DNA of 64,000 bases, from the NCBI RefSeq assembly GCF_011386835.1, contig NC_088791.1:357120001-357184000 (forward strand), in the 5' to 3' direction. A model generated the notes under the pieces. That model was not told where the DNA came from. It was given only the letters and a program-made list of their open reading frames with translations, and ran no database searches. This DNA is from Chrysemys picta bellii. Lineage: Eukaryota. The first letter of the stretch is position 1. The number at the start of each line of letters is the position of its first letter. The position numbers were made by a program, and so were the translations under genes. This document shows, one piece after another, positions 1,562 to 58,463 of the stretch.

Positions 1562-1749
1562 ATGCAATGAAAACCAGGCTAGAGAATCCATGCTGTAGGG
1601 AGTTTCCTATTCACCTAGTTACTGAAAATCTGAGAGTGGAAAAAAACCCAAACCTTTGCCAAGACATGTGCCAGGGGAAAACATCCCAACTAGAACACAG
1701 CTCCATGGAAACACCTGCTTATTTGCTGTAGTGGCCAAAACAAAGACAA

Positions 1750-3369: not shown

Positions 3370-4166
3370 GGGCTTTTCTACACTTAAAATGCTACAGCAG
3401 TGCTTCCTTAGCATTTCAGTGTAGACACGACTTACACTGATGGTGGTAACTAGGTTGATGCTGTCTACACCAGGGTTAGGTTGATATAACGACATCCTCC
3501 AGGGGTGTGTACTATTTTGCTGTTGCAAACAAAGCAAATGCAATTTTGGGGTTGCATTAACAGAGACATAACATGAAAGTCATGGTAGGTGATACTACCA
3601 CTCTACTCAGTGCTGGTTAGGCCTCAGTTGAAGTACTGTGTCCAGTTTAGGTCACTAAGGTTTAGGAAGGATGTAGAGATACTGGAAAGGATCTAAAGGC
3701 AAGTGACAAAGGTGATCCAAGGGATGGAATTCAAGCCATATGAGCAAGCTGAAGGAACCAGGTATGTTTAGTTTGGAAAAGAGGAGATTGAGGGGACATG
3801 CCAGCGGTCTTCAGATCCTTGCAAGGCTGCCATAAAAAAGATGGGGAAAAGTTGTTCTCTCTTGCCACAGAGGCAGGACAAGAGTCAATGGGTTCAAACT
3901 GCAGCATAGTAGATTCAGATGAAATCTCAGGAAAAACTCCCTAAATGTAAGATCAGGCGAACAATGGAACAGTCACCTAGACAGGCTGTGGGGACTCCTT
4001 TGCTGGAGGTTTCCCAAAGGATGCTGGGTAGTCATGTGCTTGGGATGGTTTAGATATAACAAATCCTGCATCTCAGCAGGGGTTAGATTAGCTGACCCTT
4101 GTGGTGCCATCTCACCCTGTGGCTCTATGATTCTATGATGTAAAATCCTAGTGTAGACCAGGCCTT
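3370..4166. mobile_element. Old Harbinger MITE containing a CR1 3' fragment (~3540-4139)
   Basis: Termini GGGCTTTTCTACACT / AGTGTAGACCAGGCC, flanked by TGA / TTA. The internal CR1 piece ends CTCTATGATTCTATGAT. The composite also occurs in unit B (~27650-28516) and in remnant form in C and D. Confidence 0.6.
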
Positions 4167-8425: not shown

Positions 8426-8910
8426 GGCTTTGTCTACACTGGCACTTTTGTCAGTAAACCTTTTGCCGGTTAGGGGTGTGACAAAACCACCCCCTCCTAA
8501 CTGAGAAAAGCGCCAGTGTTGGCAGCGTTTTGTCAGCGGGAGACCAATTAAAAATAAGGAGAAACTGGGAAAGGTGGAAGGAAAACCCATCACCCTGCTC
8601 TGTGGCACGGGGGAACCCCAGACAGTGGCTGAAATGTCAGGGCAGTTCACAGTCTGTTCATCACACAGCCCAGGCCCTGCCCAGGTCCTCGCTCTGCTGC
8701 AGGGATCCTGCAGGTCGGACACTCGCTTTGGTGGTGGCCACATGCCCTCATGCTCTGAATGGCAGGGCCCTTCTTCCCAGCATTGCCACCACCCATCAGG
8801 CCTCTTCACCTGGGGCGTCTCCCTGCACTTCCTGGCCCCAACTGTTCACTGCACCCGGCTCCGGACTGCTCCAGCTTCAGCTCCAGGCCCTGTTCCAGGT
8901 CCCATACACA
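8426..8910. mobile_element. Truncated Harbinger MITE (8426-8545) followed by an LTR fragment (8546-8910)
   Basis: TCA|GGCTTTGTCTACACT is the same insertion site as the complete MITE at 33489. The LTR piece matches the interior of the solo LTR at 45723-46947. Confidence 0.55.
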
Positions 8911-9655: not shown

Positions 9656-11062
9656 ACATAACATAAGAACGGCCATACTGGATCAGACCAAAGGTCCATC
9701 CAGCCCAGTATCCTGTCTACCGACAGTGGCCAATGCCATGTGCCCTAGAGGCAGTGAACCTAACAGGTAATGATCAAGTGAACTTTCTCCTGCCGTCCAT
9801 CACCACCCCCTGATAAACAGAGGCTAGGGACAGCATTCCTTTTCCATCCTGGCTAATAGCCATTAACGGACTTAACCTCCATTAATTTATCCAGTTCTCT
9901 TATAAATGCTGTTATAGTCCTAGCCTTCACAACCTCCTCAGGCAAGGAGTTTCACAAGTTGACTGTGTGCTGTGTGAAGAAGAATTTCCTTTTATTTGTT
10001 TTAAACCTGCTGCCTATTAATTTCATTTGGTGCCCCTAAGTCTTATATTATGGGAACAAGTAAATAACTTTTTCTTATTCACTTTCTCCACATCACTCAT
10101 GATTTTATATACCTCTAGCATATCCCCCCTTAGTCTCCTCTTTTCCAAGCTGAAAAGTCCTAGCCTCTTTAATCTCTCATCATATGGGATCCAATCCAAA
10201 CCCCTAATCATTTTAGTTGCCCTTCTCTGAACCTTTTCTAATGCCAGTATATCGTTTTGAGATGAGGAGACCATATCTGTATGCCGTATTCAAAATGTGG
10301 TTTATATAAGGGCAATAAGATATTCTCCATCTTATTGTCTATCCCCTTTTTAATGATTCCTAACATCCTGTTTGCTTTTTTGACTGCTGCTGCACACTGC
10401 GTGGACGTCTTCAGAGAACTATCCACGATGACTCCAAGATCTTTTTCCTGATTAGTTGTAGCTAAATTAGCCCCCATCATATTGTATGTATAGTTGGGGT
10501 TATTTGTCCCAATGTGCATTACTTTACATTTATCCACATTACATTTAATTTGCCATTTTGTTGCTCAATCACTTAGTTTTGTGAGATATTTTTGAAGTTC
10601 TTCACAGTCTGCTTTGGTCTTAACTATCTTGAGCAGTTTAGTATAATCTGCACACTTTGCAACCTCACTGTTTACCCCTTTCTCAAGATCATTTATTAAT
10701 AAGTTGAATAGGATTGATCCTAGGACTGAACTTGGGGAACACCACTAGTCACCCCTCTCCATTCTGAAAATTTACCATTTATTCCTACCCTTTGTTCCCT
10801 GGCTTTTAACCAGTTCTCAATCCATGAAAGGATCTTCCTTCTTATCCCATGACAATTTAATTTACGTAAGAGCCTTTGGTGAGGGACCTTGTCAAAGGCT
10901 TTCTGGAAATCTAAGTATACTATGTCCACTGGATCCCCCTTGTCCACATGTTTGTTGACTCCTTCAAAGAACTCTAATAGATTAGTAAGACATAATTTCC
11001 CTTTACAGAAACCATGTTGACTTTTTCCCAACAATTTATGTTCTTCTATTATGTTCTTCTTC
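9656..11062 (-). mobile_element. 5'-truncated CR1 LINE (ACATAAGAAC-tail subfamily)
   Basis: RT ORF pieces 10023-10274, 10238-10537 and 10720-11034 ([22 protein letters not shown]). The empty site AAATGTTGATAGAATG is seen in the inverted paralogue at ~50565-50582. Confidence 0.88.
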
Positions 11063-27840: not shown

Positions 27841-29580
27841 ACATCTCTCTGGGGTGTGGATTTCTTTGCTATTGCAAAGGAAGAAAACGCAGTTGTGGGT
27901 TGCATTAACAAAGGCAGAGCATGCAAGTCTCCGGAGGTGATAGTATTCCTCTACTCAGCGCTGGTTAGGCCTCAGCTGGAGCATTGTGACCAGTTTAGGT
28001 CACCAGTGTATAGGAAGGATGTAGAGGAACTGGAAAGGAACCAGAAGCGACAGACAAAGAGGATCCAAGGGACGGAGCACAAACCATATCAGCAAAGGCT
28101 GAAGGAACTGAGTATGTTTAGCTTGAAAAAGAGGAGATTGAATGGGGATGACAGCGGTCTTCAGCTACTTGAAAGGCTGACATTAAAAAAAGATGGAGAA
28201 AAATTGTTCTGTCTCACCACAGTAGGTGGGACAAGAGTCAATGGGTTAAAACTACAGCAGAGCAGATTTATGAAATCTCAGGAAGAACTTTCTAACTGTA
28301 AGAATAGGAGGACAATGGAACAGAGGCCTCAGGAGGACGTGGAAGCTCCTTTGCCGGAGATTTTCCAACTGAGACTGGATACTCATCTGTCTGGGATAGT
28401 TTTGGTGCAACAAACCCTGCATCGTGGCAGGGAGTGAGACTAGATGTCCCTTGCGGTCCCTTCTCACCCTGCAGCTCTATGATTCTACAATATAAAATCC
28501 TAGTGTAGACCAGGCCTTAGTCAGACACAAGTTATTGAGCTCAATACAGGGGTAATTGGGTAAAATTTCATGGCCTGTGTTATATTGGAGGTCAGACAGG
28601 ATGAACTAATGTTGCCTTCTGACATTGAACCCTATGAATCCATTGATAACGAAAAGATAAAGATCAGACATTAATATTTACTCTGTCTCACAACACACGA
28701 ACAAGGGAACATTCAATTACATGGAAAATCTGAACATATAACACTGAGAAAAGAAAATTGTTTACATAATCCATATTTGGCCTGTGGAACTCCTTGTCAC
28801 TGACATTATTGGAGAGGAGCTTAGCTCAATGAGATTCACAAATGGATTGGCCATTGTAGGTGGTGCTGGTGGCACCACAGTTAGTTGAGTCCTTCTGACA
28901 CCTTCAATTAGGAGACCTGATTTTCAGTTGCTTATAAGTTTGCTAAATTTTACGCATTTGGACTGAAATTTCCCACGATGGGTGTCTGCTTCCAGTTGAT
29001 TTGTGTTTTGAAAGTTTCAGGCATAACACTTCAGCTGACTTCTCCGCTAGGAGAGAAGATGTCTTGCCCATGTTGAAAAGTTCTTATAATTGTTCCAGCG
29101 AGGAGCCCTAGCACCTCCATGCTCTCCAGTATATAAAAGTCAGGTAACAGCCCCCCCCGTTAACAGTCAGAGCCCTGAAATGCAAGAGCAGGAGGTGACA
29201 GTGTCTGTGCATTAACACACAGCTGGACCCTGAGGTCTTTAATCAGTTTTTACTCCAAGGGGAGTTTTGCCCCAGTGGGGCCATAGCCTCAGAATTTGGC
29301 CTTGTACTGTGCATCTACTAACACCTTTCATCCTGAAGGGTCCACCGTGCCACTGAAATGCAGCCACCTCAGGGCTAGATGCCATCAGCCAGGGCGGGAG
29401 GGAGTGCCCAGGAAAGAGGGACATTTTGGCCAGTGATACTGGAGCAAATTCATCACCTGTGGCAAGAGCCCTGGGATGTTTAATGGCTGTGCAGATCGGA
29501 AAGGACCCCAGACCTACTCTCTGTCCCATCACGCCCACATTGCACTGGGATTGTCGAGCAGGTGAGCTCCTCAGCAAGAG

Positions 29581-51267: not shown

Positions 51268-51598
51268 TGTGAGGGGACTGTCAGCCGCTAACTAAAACTT
51301 AGTGAGGATTTTTGGTTGGCCCACTCCGAGTACCAAAAGGAAGGGGGAGGGTTGACGAGAATCCAGAACCCTGAGACTGACAGCCCCCAGCAGGAATGGG
51401 GAGAGGCCAACAGTACAGGGCAGCCTGATTGACAGGGCAGGCAGGCCAATGAGGGAGTCAGAAGGCTGGGGCTGCCTGGCCGGAGCAGGGCTGTAAGGGA
51501 GAGCAGGGGCCCGAGCTGAGCAGAGAGCAGAGCCACTGCCAAAGGCAGAGAAGCAGCACAGGGAGATGGAGATGGAGCTGGGGCTGAAGCAGTCTGGA
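51268..51598. mobile_element. LTR terminal fragment (family of 45723-46947)
   Basis: Starts TGTGAGGGGACTGTC, at the same host junction (CTCATTAGCT...TGTGTGAGGGG) as 34230 and, inverted, ~8910. Confidence 0.65.
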
Positions 51599-52092
51599 GT
51601 TTCCATGGAGCTGTGTTCTAGTTGGGATGTTTTCCCCTGGCACATGTCTTGGCAAAGGTTTGGGTTTTTTTCCACTCTCAGATTTTCAGTAACTAGGGCC
51701 TGGTCTACACTAGGCGTTTATGTCGAAGTTAGCGCCGTTACATTGAATTAACCCTGCGCCCGTCCACACTGCGATGCTATTTAGTTCGACATAGAGGTCT
51801 CTTTAATTCGACTTCTGTACTCCTCCCCGACGAGGGGAGTAGCGCCAAATTCGACATGGCCATGTCGAATTAGGCTAGGTGTGGATGGAAATCGACGCTA
51901 ATAGCTCCGGGAGCTATCCCACAGTGCACCACTCTGTTGACGCTCTGGACAGCAGTGCGAGCTCGGATGCTCTGACCAGCCACACAGGAAAAGCCCCGGG
52001 AAAATTTGAATTGGAATTCCTTTTCCTGTCTGGCCAGTTTGAATCTCATTTCCTGTCTGGACATCGTGGCGAGCACAGCAGCACTGGCAACG

Positions 52093-54139
52093 ATGCAGAG
52101 CTCTCCAGCAGTGATGGCCGTGCAGTCTGTGAATAGAAAGAGAGCCCCATCATGGACTGATCGGGAAGTCTTGGATCTCATCGCTCTGTGGGGCGATGAG
52201 TCCGTGCTTTCCGAGCTGCGATCCAAAAGACGGAATGCAAAGATCTACGAGAAGATCTCTAAAGACATGGCAGAGAGAGGATACAGCCGGGATGCAACGC
52301 AGTGCCGCGTGAAAATCAAGGAGCTGAGACAAGGCTACCAGAAGACCAAAGAGGCAAACGGACGCTCCGGATCCCATCCCCAGACATCCCGTTTCTACGA
52401 GGCACTGCATTCCATCCTCGGTGCGGCCGCCACCACTACCCCACCAGTGACCGTGGACTCTGAGGATGGGATAGTGTCCACGGCCGGTTCCTCCGACATG
52501 TTAGGGGACGGGGAAGATGAGGAAGGAGATGAGGAGGGCGAGGCAGTCGGCAGCGCTCACAACGCTGATTTCCCCGACAGCCAGGATCTCTTCATCACCC
52601 TTACAGAGATCCCCTACGAAGCGTCCCCAGCCGTTACCCCGGACACAGAATCTGGTGAAGGATCAGCCAGTAAGTGTTGTAAACATCTAAACATTTATTT
52701 TTAACAAAACAGGAATATTAACAATTAAAAGAATGGGTTGTTCATGATTAGTGTGCCCTATGCGCTTAACGGTTTAGTCATGGGCAGTGCAAGTTTTGAA
52801 AAAAAATCTAGCAATGTCCGGTTTTCAGTGATTGTCCTGCACAAGCCGCTCTACTGTTTATTCCCTGCTACTGCAGCTACAGTAAAATGCGGTCTATATG
52901 TCCGGGGATAGAGCAGTAATCCTCCTGGGATATCTCGATGAAGCTCTCCTGGAGGTAATTTGAAAGCCGTTGCATGAGGTTCCTGGGGAGAGCGGCCTTA
53001 TTGGGTCCTCCGAAGTACGACACGTTGCCGCGCCACGAGACTATCACGTACTCGGGAATCATTGCTCTGCATAGCAGGGCGGCATACGGCCCTGGTCTTT
53101 GGAGGCTTTCCCGGAGCATTCTCTCTCTGTCGCTCTCAGAGATCCTCATCAGGGTGATGTCGCCCATGGTGACCTGCTTTGAATTAGGTAGGGGAATGTT
53201 AGTGTTGGGACTGCTTTCCCGTTCCTTGACAGAACTGTAACCGCTGGTTTGTAGCCACGCGGTGGAGGCGGGAGAGGGGCAGCCGAAAGAGATCGTTCCC
53301 GGGGAAAGCCGCGAGGGGGTGGGACAGGGGCAGAGTTCCCGCTTGCCGGATTGCTGGCTGCAGGAACTGACATAGCTTTAAATGTGAAATGAGGCCAGTG
53401 CTAATATAAAAGTTTTAAACTGCCACAAGTGTACGGCTCACCATGTCTGCCTGCAACAGAAATTCCGTTGTGCTGCCCCGCTTCTCAAATGTGCTGTGCA
53501 AGACCCCAGGCACTGAATGCGAAGGCTGAAAATTCGACCTTGTGCTGAGTGCGCATGTGATAGGTGCTGTGCATGGTCTTGTTCACAGAGAAAGACTATG
53601 TTCTTTGTTCACAACTACATTTTTCTTTCTGAGGAATTCACTCCCTTTTTCCCATTTCCACAGCCCCATCTGCGACTGTCTCACAACCTAGCCTGGAATC
53701 ACACTCCCAGAGGCTAGCGCGGATTAGGCGTAGGAAGAGGAGGACACGGGAGGACATGTTCTCTGAGCTTATGGCCTGTTCCCAAGCCCAGGCAGCACAG
53801 CAGACCCAGTGGCGGGAGAACTTGACCCGAATGCACCAAGCCAACATGGATCGGGAGGAGAGGTGGCGGCAGGAAGACCAGCAGGCGACTCAAACGCTGC
53901 TTGGACTACTGAGGGAGCAAACGGACACGCTCCGGCGCCTTGTGGATGTTCTGCAGGAACGGAGGCAGGAGGACAGAGCCCCGCTGCAGTCCATCTCTTA
54001 CCGCCCTCCCCTGCCACCAAGTCCCATACCCACCTCACCCAAAGTGCAAAGAAGGAGAGGCGGCAGAGTCCCTGCTAAGTCTCACTCCACCCCTGCAGAG
54101 AGCTCTAGTAGCAGAAGGCTCTCATTTCCCAAAATTTGA
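52093..54139 (+). CDS. Harbinger Myb/SANT-like DNA-binding protein, two exons (52093-52669 and 53664-54139), predicted 350 aa
   Basis: WTDREVLDLIALWGDE...YEKIS..M.ERGY.R.ATQCRVKIKELR. Donor GTAAGT at 52670 and acceptor TTTCCACAG at 53663 join in frame (577+476 nt). The product has an acidic linker, a basic RIRRRKRR stretch and a coiled-coil-like tail. AATAAA at 54211. Confidence 0.85.
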
Positions 54140-54888
54140 AAAGTTCTTTCCTTCCCGCCTGACACAAGCCCCCGTCCAAGTTTCACCTCCCAATGCCATG
54201 TGTAGTTGATAATAAAAAATACGTTTCTGTAAACTACTGTTTCAATCATGTTCTTTTGGAGGAGGATGGGAAAGGGGGTTGGTAATTGGACAGGACAGTC
54301 ACCTTTGGCAGGGTACATAGTCGGGGGCAGGCACAGCAGCAGGGCACATACACAGTGCAGTGATGCAGTGACTAGTTACCCTGGTTAGTCTGGGAGGTTG
54401 TTTTCATGTTATGTGGTGGGGGGTGGGTTGCTCTGTGACTTTGTGGCAGGGGAGGGCAGTTACAGATCTTAAGCGGCGGTCCTTAGGCAGGATCACAGAG
54501 CCACAAGCAGGGGATCTGTAACCGTCCTCCCCCTGCCACAAAGTCACATAGACCCCCCCATACACACAGTCCCGATCAGGAGGGGTGACAGGCTCCGTTG
54601 AAACAACCATCCCACCGCAGTGGAGCCTGTCGATCCTTGAGTTTAGAAGCTGCATTCGCGTCACTACACTACACCCGCTCCGCACCACAGTCTGCATCCC
54701 AGTTTTAAAAAATTCCCGCGAAAACAGTATTAAAGAAAACGGTGTGCTTTAACAAAGTTGAACTATTTTTATTTCGAAACGTGTGTTGGAAGGGGGGTGA
54801 AGGGGGTATGTAACTGGATAGGATAGTCAACATTAACTGGGTAAAGAAACGGGGGCAGGTTTAGCTTCTCAGTACACAAACTTTAAAG

Positions 54889-56172
54889 TCACAGGTTACC
54901 CTGCTCACTCAGGAACTTTGCTTTCAAAGCCTCCCGGATGCACAGCGCTTCCCGCTGGTCTCTTCTAATCGCCCAGCTGTCTGGCTGTGAGTAATCAGCA
55001 GCCAGGCTATTTTCCTCAACCTCCCACCCCGCCATAAAGGTCTCCCCCTTGCTCTCACAGAGATTGTGGAGCACACAGCAAGCTGCTATAACAATGGGGA
55101 TATTGGTTTCGCTGAGATCACAGCGAGTCAGTAAGCTTCTCCATCTCCCCTTGAGACGGCCAAAAGCACACTCCACCACCATTCTGCACTTGCTCAGCCG
55201 GTAGTTGAAGAGTTCTTTTTCAGTGTCCAGGGCGCCAGTATAGGGCTTCATGAGCCAGGGCATTAGCGGGTAGGCTGGGTCCCCGAGGATCACTATAGGC
55301 ATCTCCACATCCCCAACAGTTATTTTGTGGTCCGGGAAGTAAATACCTTGTTGCAGCCGTCTAAACAGACGAGAGTTCCTGAAAACACGAGCATCATGAA
55401 CCTTGCCCGGCCATCCCACGTAGATGTTGGTAAAAGGTCCCCTGTGGTCCACCAGTGCTTGCAGCACCATGGAAAAGTAGCCCTTTCGGTTAATGTACTG
55501 GGTGGCCTGGTGGTCCGGTGCCAGGATAGGGATGTGAGTTCCATCTATGGCCCCACCGCAGTTTGGAAATCCCATCACTGCGAAGCCATCTATGATCGCC
55601 TCCACGTTTCCCAGGGTCACTACCTTTGGCAGCAGTACATCAACGATTGCCTTGGCTACTTGCATCACAACAACCCCCACGGTAGATTTGCCCACCCCAA
55701 ACTGGTTCGCGACTGACCGGTAGCTGTCTGGCGTTGCAAGCTTCCAGAGGGCTATGGCCACTCGCTTCTGTACACTCAGTGCAGCTCGAAACCGGGTGTC
55801 ACTGCGCTTCAGGGCAGGGGACAGCAACTCACAAAGTTCAAGGAAAGTTCCCTTCCGCATGCGAAAGTTTCGCAGCCACTGGGATTCATCCCAGACCTGC
55901 AGCACTATGCGGTCCCACCACTCAGTGCTTGTTTCCCGTGCCCAGAATCGCCGTTCCACGGCATCAACATGACCCATTGCCACCGCGATGTCCTCGGCGC
56001 TGGGTCCCGTGCTTTCTGACAGGTCCGTGCTACTCTCAGACTTCAGGACATCACCGCGGTGCCGTAGCCTCCTCGCCTGACTTTTCTGCATCTGCCTCAG
56101 GGAAACCTGTATGATAAGCTGCGAGGCGTTGAGAGCGGCCACAACTGCAGCGATGGTCACAGCGTGCTCCAT
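54889..56172 (-). CDS. Harbinger DDE transposase (HARBI1-like nuclease family), 427 aa, intact
   Basis: GAIDGTHIPI, SMVLQALVD, GWPGKVHDARVF, LGDPAYPL, FNYRLSKCRMVVECAFGRLKGRWRSL. Minus-strand AATAAA at 54768-54773. Confidence 0.93.
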   Translation of the reverse strand: MEHAVTIAAVVAALNASQLIIQVSLRQMQKSQARRLRHRGDVLKSESSTDLSESTGPSAEDIAVAMGHVDAVERRFWARETSTEWWDRIVLQVWDESQWLRNFRMRKGTFLELCELLSPALKRSDTRFRAALSVQKRVAIALWKLATPDSYRSVANQFGVGKSTVGVVVMQVAKAIVDVLLPKVVTLGNVEAIIDGFAVMGFPNCGGAIDGTHIPILAPDHQATQYINRKGYFSMVLQALVDHRGPFTNIYVGWPGKVHDARVFRNSRLFRRLQQGIYFPDHKITVGDVEMPIVILGDPAYPLMPWLMKPYTGALDTEKELFNYRLSKCRMVVECAFGRLKGRWRSLLTRCDLSETNIPIVIAACCVLHNLCESKGETFMAGWEVEENSLAADYSQPDSWAIRRDQREALCIREALKAKFLSEQGNL

Positions 56173-58177
56173 GCTCGCAGTTCTGTGGCGTCCGCGCTGT
56201 CAATGACTGGAAAAGTGCGCAAAATGATTTCCCGCTGGCGCTTTCAGGGAGGGAGGGCGGGAGTGATGGACGGATGACGACAGTTACCCAAAAGCACCCT
56301 CGCCACATTTTGTTACCCAGAAGGCATTGCCGGCTACACCCAGAATTCCAATGGGCAGAGGGGACTGCGGGAACTGTGGGATAGCTGACCACAGTGCACC
56401 GCTTCGAATGTCGACGCTTTCACCGTTAGTGTGGACGCACAAAGTCGAATTACTGTCCTTAGTGTGGACACACACGTTCGACTTTGCAATATCGACTACA
56501 AAAATTCGATGCAAGTAAAATCAAACTACTCTCGTAGTGTAGACAAGGCCTAGGTGAATGGGAAACTCTCTCAGTGGCTCTAATGTCCCAGCTGCTTGCC
56601 CTGCTAGAGCCTGGGTAATGCCCCTTGCTTAGGTGGCTAACAGCTCTCGCACCATCGTGGGATGAGAACATGGTGTGATGCTGTATGATTGAATAATGAC
56701 CAGATGTATCATTGTTGCTACCACTGTTATACAATTGCAACAAATATTGTACAGAGTATGTCCTGCCAGGTGTCAATGGGAAAGTTACGATTTGCTAAAT
56801 AGGTTTTTCCTGTTTACATGCAACTAAAGCAGAGTTACACAAGGTAAGGGAGAGCCAAGTGCTCCCACCTGTCTGTCTGGTGCAGCTGCTACTCACTGGC
56901 CCGTTCTCTCTAGCCCCAGTTTTGTTCCCCCAAACATGTGCCCTGCTATTGAAGGCCCAGGATATACTTCTAACAGCCAGGGCAGGGCAGTGCATTTCAC
57001 TGTCTCACACCCACTCAACAGCCTATGTAACCCCCCATTCTTAGTGCTGTTACTCCCCCATCTCCCCACCTGCCCCCTTTCCTGTTTCTTACACACAGTA
57101 GCTGTGTCTTGTCTGAATTTGATTTATAAGCTTCTTCGGACACGGGCTGTTTCTCCTTCTGTGTTTGCGAAGGGCTGAGCACAAGGGGTCCTGAAGTGGA
57201 GCAGGGCCTCTGGAGGTTTCCAAAATACAAATAATGGTCATGAATAATCAAGAAAATAATCCAGGTAAATCAGGGCCTGGCCCCTCCTTTTTACCGGATT
57301 GGACAGGAGAATTCATACAGTCTCATTTCAGTGTTTAAAAACCCAGGTGCTCAGCACTGGAGAAAAACCCCGATTAGCCAGACGAGCAGGCAGAGAGTTC
57401 AGCTGTGGGAATCCAAGCACCCTCCAGCCTGGGCAGTCCTGGAAAGACTGACTCAGCCTGGAACATTAGATTTCAATTCCACCTGGGAGAGGCTGGAAAA
57501 TGAACTGAGGGAGAGAACAAATCCAATGCAAACACTAATCTAGTTTCTATCCAGCCTACAGGGCCCCCCTTTTTCCAGGGCAGCAGTGAGGGGAGGGCCA
57601 GGCCTCTGTCCCCAGGTCAGGCCCCCTGGCTGCCCTCTATCCACAGGAGTATTCTGTTGGTGTTATTTTTCCTGAGTCTGTTGCCCCAGAGTGACCCCAG
57701 TGACTGTGATGCGTTGGCAGGTTTCTGAGTGGCAGTGGAAGTGGAGTCCTGGAGTTCACACCTCACAGGTGTTGGGAGCTCACAACTTCCAGCTAGTTCT
57801 GAAAACCTCAGATTCAGCTTCAGACTATGGCGAAGGCTCAGGATCCCTCTTCCAGCCTTTCCTCTGCATCCCACCCAATGAACAGTCCCTACCAGAGCGG
57901 GAATCCATTTCCCTCTTGGTGTGACGGAGAGACCGTGGTTAAGGCAGGGCAGTCAGATCTCCTGGGTTCTGTATCTCATTCTGACACTCAATCTCTGTGT
58001 CAATTCATGTTGCCCTGGACAATTCATGTCACCCTGTGCCTCAGTTTACCTATCTGTATAATGGGGATATGTTCATAGTCACTTTCCTTTGCTAAGTGTT
58101 TTCAAGATCCTTCAGTTAAAGGTGCTGTACAACATGATGATAGTTACTCATGAGAATTACAGATCCCTGATGCCTTA

Positions 58178-58463
58178 GGGTACGTCTATACCCAGCCGCT
58201 AGTTCGGCGGCTGGCAATCGAACTTCTGGGTTCGAGTTATCGCGTCCTGTCTGGACGCGATAAGTCGAACCCGGAAGTGCTCGCCGTCGACTGCGGTACT
58301 CCAGCTCGGCGAGAGGAGTACCGCGGAGTCGACGGGGGAGCCTGCCTGCCGCGTGTGGACCGAGGTAAGTTCGAACTAAGGTACTTCGAACTTCAGCTAC
58401 GTTATTCACGTAGCTGAAGTTGCATACCTTAGTTTGATTTGGGGGTTTAGTGTAGACCAAGCC
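58178..58463. mobile_element. Young CpG-rich Harbinger MITE, 286 bp, unit D specific
   Basis: Termini GGGTACGTCTATAC / AGTGTAGACCAAGCC, TTA TSD on both sides, and a single TTA at the empty site in unit C (36202-36204). Confidence 0.88.

What the first reader, a model, noticed from the sequence alone, without database searches (positions are those of the whole stretch)
51697..56550. Complete, possibly still active two-gene Harbinger transposon in an amniote genome
It has both TIRs, an exact TSD, an uninterrupted 427-aa transposase with the D/D/E motifs, an in-frame spliceable Myb partner, a polyA signal for each convergent gene, and conspicuously retained CpGs compared with the flanks. PIF/Harbinger elements need both proteins. 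Mammals retain only domesticated derivatives (HARBI1, NAIF1), so a natural intact amniote copy is a candidate active element and tool. The TAG TSD differs from the TTA/TCA/TGA of the MITEs in this window.
Basis: partly seen in the sequence, partly recalled or inferred. Interest (0 to 1): 0.75.

Follow-up and report, generated by a model that had tools for sequence, protein, structure and literature searches.

The report
Intact older Harbinger copy, painted turtle
This is a real, complete copy of a Harbinger-type jumping gene from a painted-turtle family that was catalogued in 2015; the family moved very recently, but this copy is an older one that is slowly decaying, so it is not the best candidate for a live element.

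Summary
Window 51697-56550 is a 4,854-bp PIF/Harbinger element. It has 17-nt TIRs and an exact TAG duplication, which a paralogous empty site at 1601-1630 confirms. It carries an open 427-aa DDE_Tnp_4 transposase with the triad D210/D260/E334. It also carries a two-exon Myb/SANT gene (52093-52669 and 53664-54139) whose intron is spliced out in an RNA run. Both polyA signals are present, and CpG o/e is 0.65 against 0.17-0.28 in the flanks.

- **Known family type.** Han et al. 2015 list 15 such "NuwaII" families in Chrysemys picta bellii (Repbase Harbinger-1..5D_CPB), with both ORFs intact.
- **This copy is not the young one.** Its closest fetched relative differs by 2.1%. It has 38-52 private substitutions with a neutral-like N:S of 12:4, and CpG decay accounts for 12 of the 38.
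- **The family did move recently.** Three copies on three chromosomes, with different TSDs, are 99.88-99.98% identical to each other.
- **Expression comes from other copies.** RNA contigs carry the other copies' letters at this copy's private sites.
- **Not strictly two-gene.** A third conserved ORF (52877-53167, minus strand) lies in the Myb intron. This scan had already noted it on other pieces of this genome.

Activity of this copy is unproven.

The parts
51694..51696 (.). Left target-site duplication, TAG
   Evidence: The paralogous empty site at 1601-1630 carries a single TAG.
51697..51713 (+). Left terminal inverted repeat (Myb-gene side), GGCCTGGTCTACACTAG
   Evidence: The terminal 22 nt are identical in the young copies L001, L003 and L005.
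51697..51916 (.). Left subterminal region with six TCGAC/GTCGA motifs. These are candidate binding sites for the Myb-like protein (inferred).
   Evidence: 11 of 13 motifs in the element lie within 220 bp of an end (P=2e-10). This region differs from L003 by 1.8%, against 4.2-4.4% for internal non-coding DNA.
52093..52669 (+). Myb/SANT-like gene, exon 1 (ATG at 52093; 192 codons plus 1 nt)
   Evidence: Pfam Myb_DNA-bind_4 6.6e-22. The frame is open in the window copy and in L001, L003, L004 and L005. RNA depth is high here.
52670..53663 (+). Myb gene intron (GT..AG, 994 nt)
   Evidence: RNA run X19 shows the joint 52669->53664, skipping 994 nt with GT..AG ends. Splice sites were read.
52877..53167 (-). 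Third conserved ORF (96 aa), antisense inside the Myb intron. It is preceded by a kept splice acceptor (cag|GTCACCATG, exon start about 53173). A BEN-like fold is possible but not established.
   Evidence: Open in all 7 copies. dN/dS is 0.14-0.23 against L007 and L008. No Pfam hit. AF2 mean pLDDT 67. Four BEN structures score Z 4.0-4.5 among the top 12 of 48,161 chains, tied with unrelated helical proteins. The Malaclemys gene model uses this exon.
53664..54139 (+). Myb/SANT-like gene, exon 2 (through the TGA stop at 54137-54139)
   Evidence: Frame continuity was checked by arithmetic and per-exon translation. It is open in all 7 copies.
54211..54216 (+). AATAAA polyA signal of the Myb gene, 72 nt after its stop
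54768..54773 (-). AATAAA polyA signal of the transposase gene (minus strand), about 115 nt after its stop
54889..56172 (-). Transposase ORF, 427 aa, DDE_Tnp_4, catalytic D210/D260/E334
   Evidence: It is 97% identical to P0121 and P0122 of Chrysemys picta bellii.
56331..56550 (.). Right subterminal region with five TCGAC/GTCGA motifs
56534..56550 (-). Right terminal inverted repeat (transposase side), GGCCTTGTCTACACTAC on the minus strand
56551..56553 (.). Right target-site duplication, TAG
1601..1630 (-). Paralogous empty site: another copy of the host repeat into which the element inserted, uninterrupted
   Evidence: 29/30 match; 51596-51696 is 99% identical to 1615-1715.

Best explanation
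The stretch is a full-length, structurally intact copy of a painted-turtle PIF/Harbinger family of the type Han et al. 2015 call NuwaII (Repbase Harbinger-x_CPB).

**Mechanism (established for Harbinger3_DR, inferred here).** The Myb/SANT-like protein binds the transposon ends. Here the likely sites are the TCGAC/GTCGA repeats clustered in the terminal 220 bp. The Myb-like protein also brings the DDE transposase into the nucleus and to the ends. The transposase then cuts the element out and pastes it into a 3-bp target. The family's usual target is C|TNA|G; this copy used the near-cognate C|CTA|G inside an older repeat.

**History (shown).** The family transposed very recently, but from a slightly different source lineage. 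This copy is an earlier insertion that has since picked up about 0.8-1.1% private changes in a neutral pattern, with heavy CpG loss. The CpG loss suggests it sits methylated in the germline.

**Status of this copy (inferred).** Its three reading frames are still open, mostly because it is not old enough to have lost them. Its termini are identical to those of the young copies, so it should still be movable by proteins supplied in trans. Whether its own proteins still work is open; I put that at roughly 0.3.
For: - **Anatomy** is confirmed.
- **Family membership.** The window copy aligns end to end at 97.2-97.7% with four C. picta copies.
- **Recent family activity.** L001, L003 and L005 differ from each other at only 1-6 of 4,854 sites. 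They lie on CM062327, CM062323 and CM062328 with unrelated flanks and TSDs TGA, TTA and TCA.
- **Age of this copy.** It has 38-52 private substitutions, 12 of the strict 38 by CpG decay.
- **Selection pattern.** Private N:S in transposase plus Myb is 12:4 here and 14:4 in L004, against 5:9 on the stem leading to the young copies (Fisher 0.018 pooled, 0.063 for the window alone).
- **Ends.** End motifs are enriched (P=2e-10) and the ends are 2-3 times better conserved than internal non-coding DNA.
- **Expression.** One RNA run shows the exact Myb splice joint, with depth high on exons and low on intron and ends.
- **Literature.** The two-protein mechanism is described in PMC9392472, citing Sinzelle 2008. 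The family type and target are in PMC4482050. In the transposase orientation, the base 5' of the TSD is C in 5 of 7 copies and the base 3' of it is G in 6 of 7.
Against: - No assay was run, so neither activity nor inactivity of this copy is shown.
- Only 7 full-length copies were compared. They were fetched through annotated intact proteins, so closer relatives of this copy may exist unseen, and the sample is biased towards open frames.
- Some 'private' changes may predate insertion, so the age is an upper bound.
- The RNA run is a metatranscriptome of a coded organism and consists of contigs, which drop rare variants. Absence of this copy's letters there is weak evidence.
- The catalytic triad and both TIRs are intact. 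In the wider 48-protein sample only one private replacement (R400W) hits a strongly conserved position, so the proteins could well still work.
- Identity with a particular Repbase consensus could not be checked by sequence.
Confidence: 0.8

Rival explanations
1. This very copy is a currently active, autonomous source element. On this view its own transposase and Myb-like protein are made in the germline and mobilise it and related MITEs.
For: - All ORFs are open, the DDE triad is intact, and the TIRs are identical to those of the young copies. The splice sites and polyA signals are present.
- CpG o/e of 0.65 is far above the flanks.
- Most private replacements fall at variable positions in the wider alignment.
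Against: - No near-identical daughter copy was found. The nearest fetched copy is 2.1% away, whereas another lineage has copies 0.02-0.12% apart.
- The private substitution pattern is neutral-like (12 N: 4 S), and CpG decay is roughly 9 times the non-CpG rate.
- R400W sits at a site that is R in 44 of 48 relatives.
- RNA contigs carry other copies' letters at its diagnostic sites.
- Its protein is not among the annotated proteins of the collection.
Confidence: 0.15
2. The family is extinct. On this view the near-identical copies come from segmental duplication, gene conversion or assembly error rather than transposition, so nothing here is a candidate live element.
For: [quoted passage not shown]
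Against: - L001, L003 and L005 lie on three different chromosomes. Homology ends exactly at the TIRs, and each copy is flanked by its own 3-bp duplication (TGA, TTA, TCA) and unrelated flanks. That is the signature of transposition, not duplication.
- One to six differences in 4,854 bp is very young even on a slow clock.
- Both genes are transcribed and the Myb intron is correctly spliced.
- The stem leading to these copies shows purifying selection, N:S 5:9.
Confidence: 0.04
3. The locus is a domesticated host gene pair, in the manner of HARBI1 and NAIF1 or the MSANTD genes, kept by the host for a cellular function rather than a transposon copy.
For: Both ORFs are open at about 1% private divergence. 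Harbinger genes are often domesticated (PMC9392472).
Against: - Both TIRs and the TSD are intact, and the copy is one of many full-length elements.
- Private changes are neutral-like, not constrained.
- Open frames at this divergence are expected by chance (P about 0.6 for the transposase).
- No gene model with this protein is in the collection.
Confidence: 0.01

Closest known systems
NuwaII-type PIF/Harbinger families of Chrysemys picta bellii (Han et al. 2015, PMC4482050 Table S7). An example is NuwaII-3_CPB = Repbase Harbinger-1_CPB: 4,896 bp, TIR 19, transposase 427 aa, Myb 348 aa, 289 copies.
   Same: - Same host lineage.
- DDE_Tnp_4 transposase of exactly 427 aa, and a Myb_DNA-bind_4 partner of about 350 aa.
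- Length about 4.85 kb and TIRs starting with GG.
- Sister copies use TNA targets with C and G flanks.
   Different: - Sequence identity to the Repbase consensus could not be tested because Repbase is not on hand.
- This copy's target is C|CTA|G, one base off C|TNA|G.
- The table lists two ORFs, whereas a third conserved ORF is present here.
Harbinger3_DR of zebrafish, the reconstructed element shown to transpose in human cells (Sinzelle et al. 2008, as described in PMC9392472)
   Same: It has the same two-component logic. A DDE transposase works with a Myb-like protein that binds the ends and imports and recruits the transposase. It also has TIRs and a 3-bp TSD.
   Different: - That element had to be reconstructed, whereas the turtle copies are natural open copies.
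- The target and TSD preference differs: TNA here, against the TWA of canonical PIF/Harbinger.
- No activity data exist for the turtle element.
- The protein sequences were not compared here.
HARBI1 and NAIF1 (and the MSANTD genes), domesticated Harbinger derivatives of jawed vertebrates
   Same: They have homologous domains: a DDE_Tnp_4-type nuclease and a Myb/SANT trihelix protein that interact. Several database relatives of this transposase are auto-named 'putative nuclease HARBI1'.
   Different: Those are single-copy host genes without TIRs or TSDs. This locus is a TIR- and TSD-bounded multi-copy element decaying neutrally.
Coelacanth Harbinger elements (Smith et al. 2012, cited in PMC5381603)
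   Same: Both are Harbinger families with signs of ongoing accumulation in a slowly evolving sarcopterygian genome.
   Different: The host and family differ. They were not compared by sequence here.

Membership tests
PIF/Harbinger (PHIS) superfamily | Transposase with a DDE_Tnp_4 domain and a complete D-D-E triad | tested here: met
   Pfam PF13359 at 5.3e-36 over the full profile, 1-158 of 158. D210, D260 and E334 are kept, in columns that are 46-47 of 48 conserved.
PIF/Harbinger (PHIS) superfamily | Second gene for a Myb/SANT-like DNA-binding protein | tested here: met
   Exon 1 hits PF13837 at 6.6e-22. The two exons are in frame. The intron is removed in RNA.
PIF/Harbinger (PHIS) superfamily | Short TIRs and a 3-bp target-site duplication | tested here: met
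   17-nt TIRs matching 15/17. An exact TAG duplication, confirmed by the paralogous empty site.
Canonical PIF/Harbinger group (sensu Han et al. 2015) | TSD = TWA | tested here: not met
   The TSD here is TAG (CTA in the transposase orientation). Sister copies have TGA, TTA, TTA and TCA.
NuwaII group (Han et al. 2015) | Target C|TNA|G (3-bp TNA duplication flanked by C and G) | tested here: inconclusive
   Met by the family: the four close copies have TGA, TTA, TTA and TCA. The 5' flanking base is C in 5 of 7 copies and the 3' flanking base is G in 6 of 7. This copy has C|CTA|G, one base off.
NuwaII group (Han et al. 2015) | TIRs of 13-46 bp beginning with GG; autonomous length about 4.7 kb; DDE_Tnp_4 plus Myb ORFs; present in a turtle | tested here: met
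   The TIRs begin GGCC and are 17 nt long. The element is 4,854 bp. The host lineage is Chrysemys picta bellii.
NuwaII group (Han et al. 2015) | Sequence identity to a named consensus (for example Harbinger-1_CPB) | not testable with these tools
   No Repbase or Dfam library is on hand. Only tabulated lengths could be compared.
Currently active autonomous DNA transposon | Near-identical copies at different genomic sites | tested here: not met
   For this copy the nearest fetched copy, L004, differs by 2.1%. The feature is met for the family: L001, L003 and L005 differ by 0.02-0.12% on three chromosomes.
Currently active autonomous DNA transposon | Insertion polymorphism (empty and filled alleles) | tested here: inconclusive
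   No element-skipping joint appeared in three DNA runs. One contig of organism B crosses the right junction (56529-56649, 0 differences), but only 22 nt of it lie inside the element. A contig ending at 51697 in X11 fits the paralog at 1615-1715 rather than an empty allele. The runs are contigs of coded organisms.
Currently active autonomous DNA transposon | Transcription of both genes from this copy | tested here: not met
   Family transcripts are present and spliced. At the private sites 54975, 52186, 51846, 53623, 53401 and 55291, the RNA contigs carry the other copies' letters. This rests on one run of contigs only, so the evidence is weak.
Currently active autonomous DNA transposon | Excision or transposition in an assay | not testable with these tools
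   This needs a bench experiment.
Domesticated Harbinger-derived host gene (HARBI1/NAIF1 type) | Loss of TIRs and TSD, single-copy orthology, purifying selection at the locus | tested here: not met
   The TIRs and TSD are intact. The element is multi-copy. Private N:S is 12:4.
BEN domain (for the third ORF, 52877-53167, minus strand) | Sequence or fold match to BEN domains | tested here: inconclusive
   There is no Pfam hit at E<=1. The AF2 model has mean pLDDT 67. Foldseek gives nothing at E<=0.001; BEND3 BEN4 reaches TM 0.52 at E 4.2. With VIA-align, the BANP, BEND3, Bsg25A and NACC1 BEN domains score Z 4.0-4.5 over residues 3-96, within the top 12 of 48,161 chains, but tied with unrelated helical proteins.

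The most novel reading that the evidence does not exclude
This painted-turtle Harbinger lineage is still transposing in living animals. That would make it a natural, unreconstructed active Harbinger in an amniote. It would work as a three-component system in which the small conserved ORF in the Myb intron, possibly BEN-like, is a needed or regulating factor. On this reading the window copy, with its intact ends and open frames, would still be mobilisable and perhaps still coding-competent.
Probability: 0.2. Interest if true: 0.7.

Novelty: already known. Interest (0 to 1): 0.33.

Why it matters
Harbinger transposons are absent as mobile elements from mammals and birds (PMC4350176). The only vertebrate Harbinger shown to transpose had to be reconstructed (PMC9392472).

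A natural working amniote element would be a useful two-component gene-transfer tool. It would also be a model for how HARBI1/NAIF1-type genes arise.

This window adds little by itself. The family type is catalogued, and this copy is an older, neutrally decaying member.

Two things seen on the way are worth more:
- Three essentially identical copies (0.02-0.12% apart) on three chromosomes point to very recent transposition in a famously slow-evolving genome.
- A strongly constrained third ORF appears in every copy examined. The two-gene description of these families does not mention it.

Tried and rejected
1. tblastn of the transposase against the phage collection gave no match. It was an irrelevant collection and a wasted call.
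2. The PDB sequence search with the transposase found no solved relative at E<=0.01.
3. blastn of the whole element against the rest of the window found no other copy beyond 17-nt TIR-level similarity. The MITE-like termini in the window therefore belong to other families that share the GTCTACAC core.
4. Bird proteins in the transposase's 90% cluster (Apaloderma, Eurypyga, Cariama 'PHD finger protein 20') looked like possible horizontal transfer. The Apaloderma one, P0135, is a genuine PHF20 fragment with a PHD_5 domain. I infer that a long C. picta PHF20 model, P0138, chains these proteins into the cluster. That lead is rejected.
5. I first read R246P and G268R as hits on invariant residues in the 15-protein alignment. 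In a 49-protein alignment these columns vary (R 34/48 and G 31/48). Only R400 is strongly conserved, so I softened that argument.
6. A contig of run X11 ending at 51697 looked like a possible empty allele. It aligns only over 51599-51697, which is the span shared with the paralog at 1615-1715, so I read it as the paralog.
7. Literature searches for a paper on active Harbinger elements in turtles, or on Harbinger plus a BEN domain, found none in the held library.
8. The spliced Myb protein was never joined. No search or fold of the full 350-aa product was therefore run.


Full report
**What is there**

Window 51697-56550 (4,854 bp) is bounded by 17-nt inverted termini. The left one is GGCCTGGTCTACACTAG. 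The right one reads GGCCTTGTCTACACTAC on the minus strand, a 15/17 match.

TAG lies on both sides. The pattern 'left flank + one TAG + right flank' occurs uninterrupted at 1601-1630 on the minus strand (29/30), where none is expected by chance. That site belongs to a paralogous copy of the older repeat into which the element inserted: 51596-51696 is 99% identical to 1615-1715. The ends and the 3-bp duplication are therefore confirmed independently of the element itself.

**Coding content**

- **Transposase.** On the minus strand, 54889-56172 is an open 427-aa frame with a full-length DDE_Tnp_4 match at 5e-36. D210, D260 and E334 sit in columns that hold D, D and E in 47, 47 and 46 of 48 turtle relatives.
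- **Myb/SANT gene.** On the plus strand this gene has exon 1 at 52093-52669 (Myb_DNA-bind_4, 7e-22), a GT..AG intron of 994 nt, and exon 2 at 53664-54139. That is 577+476 nt, or 350 codons plus stop. The length matches the 350-residue models annotated on sister copies. I treated the exons separately throughout and did not join them.
- **3' ends.** AATAAA follows each of the convergent genes, at 54211 on the plus strand and at 54768-54773 on the minus strand.
- **CpG.** CpG o/e is 0.65 inside, 0.17 and 0.28 in the flanks.
- **End motifs.** The pentamers TCGAC/GTCGA cluster at the ends, with 11 of 13 within 220 bp (P=2e-10). The ends are 2-3 times better conserved than internal non-coding DNA. 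I infer that these are the binding sites of the Myb-like protein.

**A third ORF**

Inside the Myb intron, on the transposase strand, lies a 96-aa ORF at 52877-53167.

- It is open in all seven copies compared, including two whose Myb exon 1 is frameshifted.
- It has dN/dS of 0.14-0.23 against the divergent copies, lower than the transposase's 0.35-0.69.
- It is preceded by a kept acceptor, cag|GTCACCATG.
- A Malaclemys gene model splices a host-side first exon onto exactly this exon of a distant family member.
- Pfam finds nothing.
- My AlphaFold model is only moderate, with mean pLDDT 67.
- Foldseek gives nothing significant.
- VIA-align places four BEN domains (BANP, BEND3, Bsg25A, NACC1) at Z 4.0-4.5 in the top 12 of 48,161 chains, but these are tied with unrelated helical proteins.

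So it is a real coding exon, and the BEN-like fold is suggestive only. Earlier notes of this scan reported the same ORF on other pieces of this genome. I confirm the constraint. I do not confirm the fold or the transcript structure.

**Where it comes from and what is known**

The best protein relatives are Chrysemys picta bellii proteins, 97% identical for P0121 and P0122. Other turtles follow at 59-84%. The window's exact protein is not in the collection.

Han et al. 2015 (PMC4482050) split the PIF/Harbinger superfamily by target site. They define a 'NuwaII' group by these features:
- target C|TNA|G;
- TIRs beginning GG;
- mean autonomous length about 4.7 kb;
- a DDE_Tnp_4 ORF plus a Myb ORF.

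Their Table S7 lists 15 such families in C. picta bellii, all already in Repbase as Harbinger-1..5D_CPB. One example is NuwaII-3_CPB = Harbinger-1_CPB: 4,896 bp, 427-aa transposase, 348-aa Myb, 289 copies. They call families with both ORFs intact 'potential active'.

The sister copies here use TGA, TTA, TTA and TCA. The 5' flanking base is C in 5 of 7 copies and the 3' flanking base is G in 6 of 7. The family fits that group. The window copy used C|CTA|G, one base off.

I could not compare sequences with Repbase. The two-protein mechanism is taken from PMC9392472, citing Sinzelle 2008: Myb binds the ends and imports and recruits the transposase, and both proteins are required.

**Is this copy live?**

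I fetched seven full-length copies through annotated proteins, which biases the sample towards open frames.

- **A young burst exists.** Three copies (L001, L003, L005) lie on three chromosomes with unrelated flanks and their own TSDs. They differ from each other at 1-6 of 4,854 sites. That is the signature of very recent transposition.
- **The window copy is not part of it.** It is 2.7% from these three and 2.1% from its nearest fetched relative, L004.
- **Its private changes look neutral.** It has 38 private substitutions (52 if only the four close copies must agree), and 12 of the 38 are CpG to TpG or CpA. In transposase plus Myb its private changes are 12 non-synonymous to 4 synonymous, and L004's are 14:4. 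The stem leading to the young copies has 5:9. Fisher P is 0.018 pooled and 0.063 for the window alone. The source lineage therefore stayed under purifying selection, while this copy has drifted since insertion.
- **Replacements.** Among its private replacements, R400W hits a site that is R in 44 of 48 relatives. R246P and G268R hit moderately variable sites.
- **Open frames are not surprising.** Fourteen random substitutions leave the transposase frame open 60% of the time.
[quoted passage not shown] This is an upper bound. The young copies come out at well under about a million years.

**Reads**

Three DNA runs of differently labelled (coded) organisms hold the flanks at single-copy-like depth and the element at a summed depth 1,000-5,000 times higher. 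That figure is not a copy number, but it does show a large family.

- No joint skipping the element was reported.
- One contig of organism B crosses the right junction without a difference, though with only 22 nt inside the element.
- A contig of organism D that stops at 51697 fits the paralog at 1615-1715 and not an empty allele.
- In the one certain RNA run (a metatranscriptome of a coded organism), depth is high on the Myb exons and the transposase ORF and low on the intron, the intergenic part and the ends. The exact joint 52669->53664 (GT..AG) is present.
- At this copy's private sites (54975, 52186, 51846, 53623, 53401, 55291) the RNA contigs carry the other copies' letters.

All runs were contigs, so rare variants may be lost.

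**Verdict**

This is an intact autonomous-type Harbinger of an amniote, and its family looks recently mobile. However, the family type and its 'potentially active' status were published in 2015, and this copy is an older, neutrally decaying member rather than the likely live source.

Because its ends are identical to those of the young copies, it probably remains movable in trans. Whether its own proteins work is untested.

Noticed in passing
L001:5623-10476, L003:5623-10476, L005:5623-10476 (C. picta chromosomes CM062327, CM062323, CM062328): Three full-length sister elements differ from each other at only 1-6 of 4,854 sites. Each has its own TSD (TGA, TTA, TCA) and unrelated flanks, and all three ORFs are open. 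The transposase of L003 (P0122) is listed at three places in the assembly. These copies, not the window copy, are the signature of very recent transposition.
   Followed up: partly
window 52877-53167 (minus strand); L010:6001-6081 and 10279-10572: The third ORF in the Myb intron is the most constrained coding piece of the element, with dN/dS 0.14-0.23 against divergent copies. Yet on the stem leading to the youngest copies it has 5 non-synonymous and 0 synonymous changes. In Malaclemys, a gene model (LOC128826488) splices an exon lying outside a distant family member onto this exon.
   Followed up: partly
L002 (Oxyura jamaicensis assembly GCA_011077185.1, contig JAACYN010021769.1, 2,319 bp): A ruddy-duck contig consists only of the transposase-side 2.3 kb of this turtle element. 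It starts at the TIR, is 99.6% identical to the young painted-turtle copies, and encodes a 427-aa protein identical to a C. picta one. With no flanks, turtle DNA contamination of the duck assembly is the simplest reading. Horizontal transfer is not excluded.
   Followed up: partly
window 1615-1715 (minus strand) versus 51596-51696: A 101-nt stretch of the left flank recurs 50 kb away, inverted, at 99% identity. It runs on through the target TAG for about 18 nt. Weaker copies (81-87%) lie at about 23647, 42363 and 62524. The host repeat is itself a multi-copy family with one very similar pair.
   Followed up: partly
window 4148-4164 (minus strand), 28500-28516 (minus strand), 8426-8442 (+), 58447-58463 (minus strand), and further GTCTACAC cores at 868, 3419, 3463, 26048, 27699, 33719, 39977, 60480: There are many other Harbinger-type termini in the window. 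Two have exactly the 17-nt left TIR, followed by TTA. They share no internal similarity with this element, so they are presumably MITE families that use the same or related transposases.
   Followed up: no
protein cluster of P0002; L009: A 1,274-aa C. picta 'PHD finger protein 20' model (P0138) sits in the same 90% cluster as Harbinger transposases and as bird PHF20 fragments. It is probably a chimeric gene model that has swallowed an intronic Harbinger. The bird member checked (P0135) is a plain PHF20 with a PHD_5 domain.
   Followed up: partly
window 53852 (loose ends in runs X13 and X19): Several DNA and RNA contigs match only from 53852 rightwards and carry unrelated sequence before it. 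This is probably a related subfamily or a rearranged copy that shares the 3' part of Myb exon 2.
   Followed up: no
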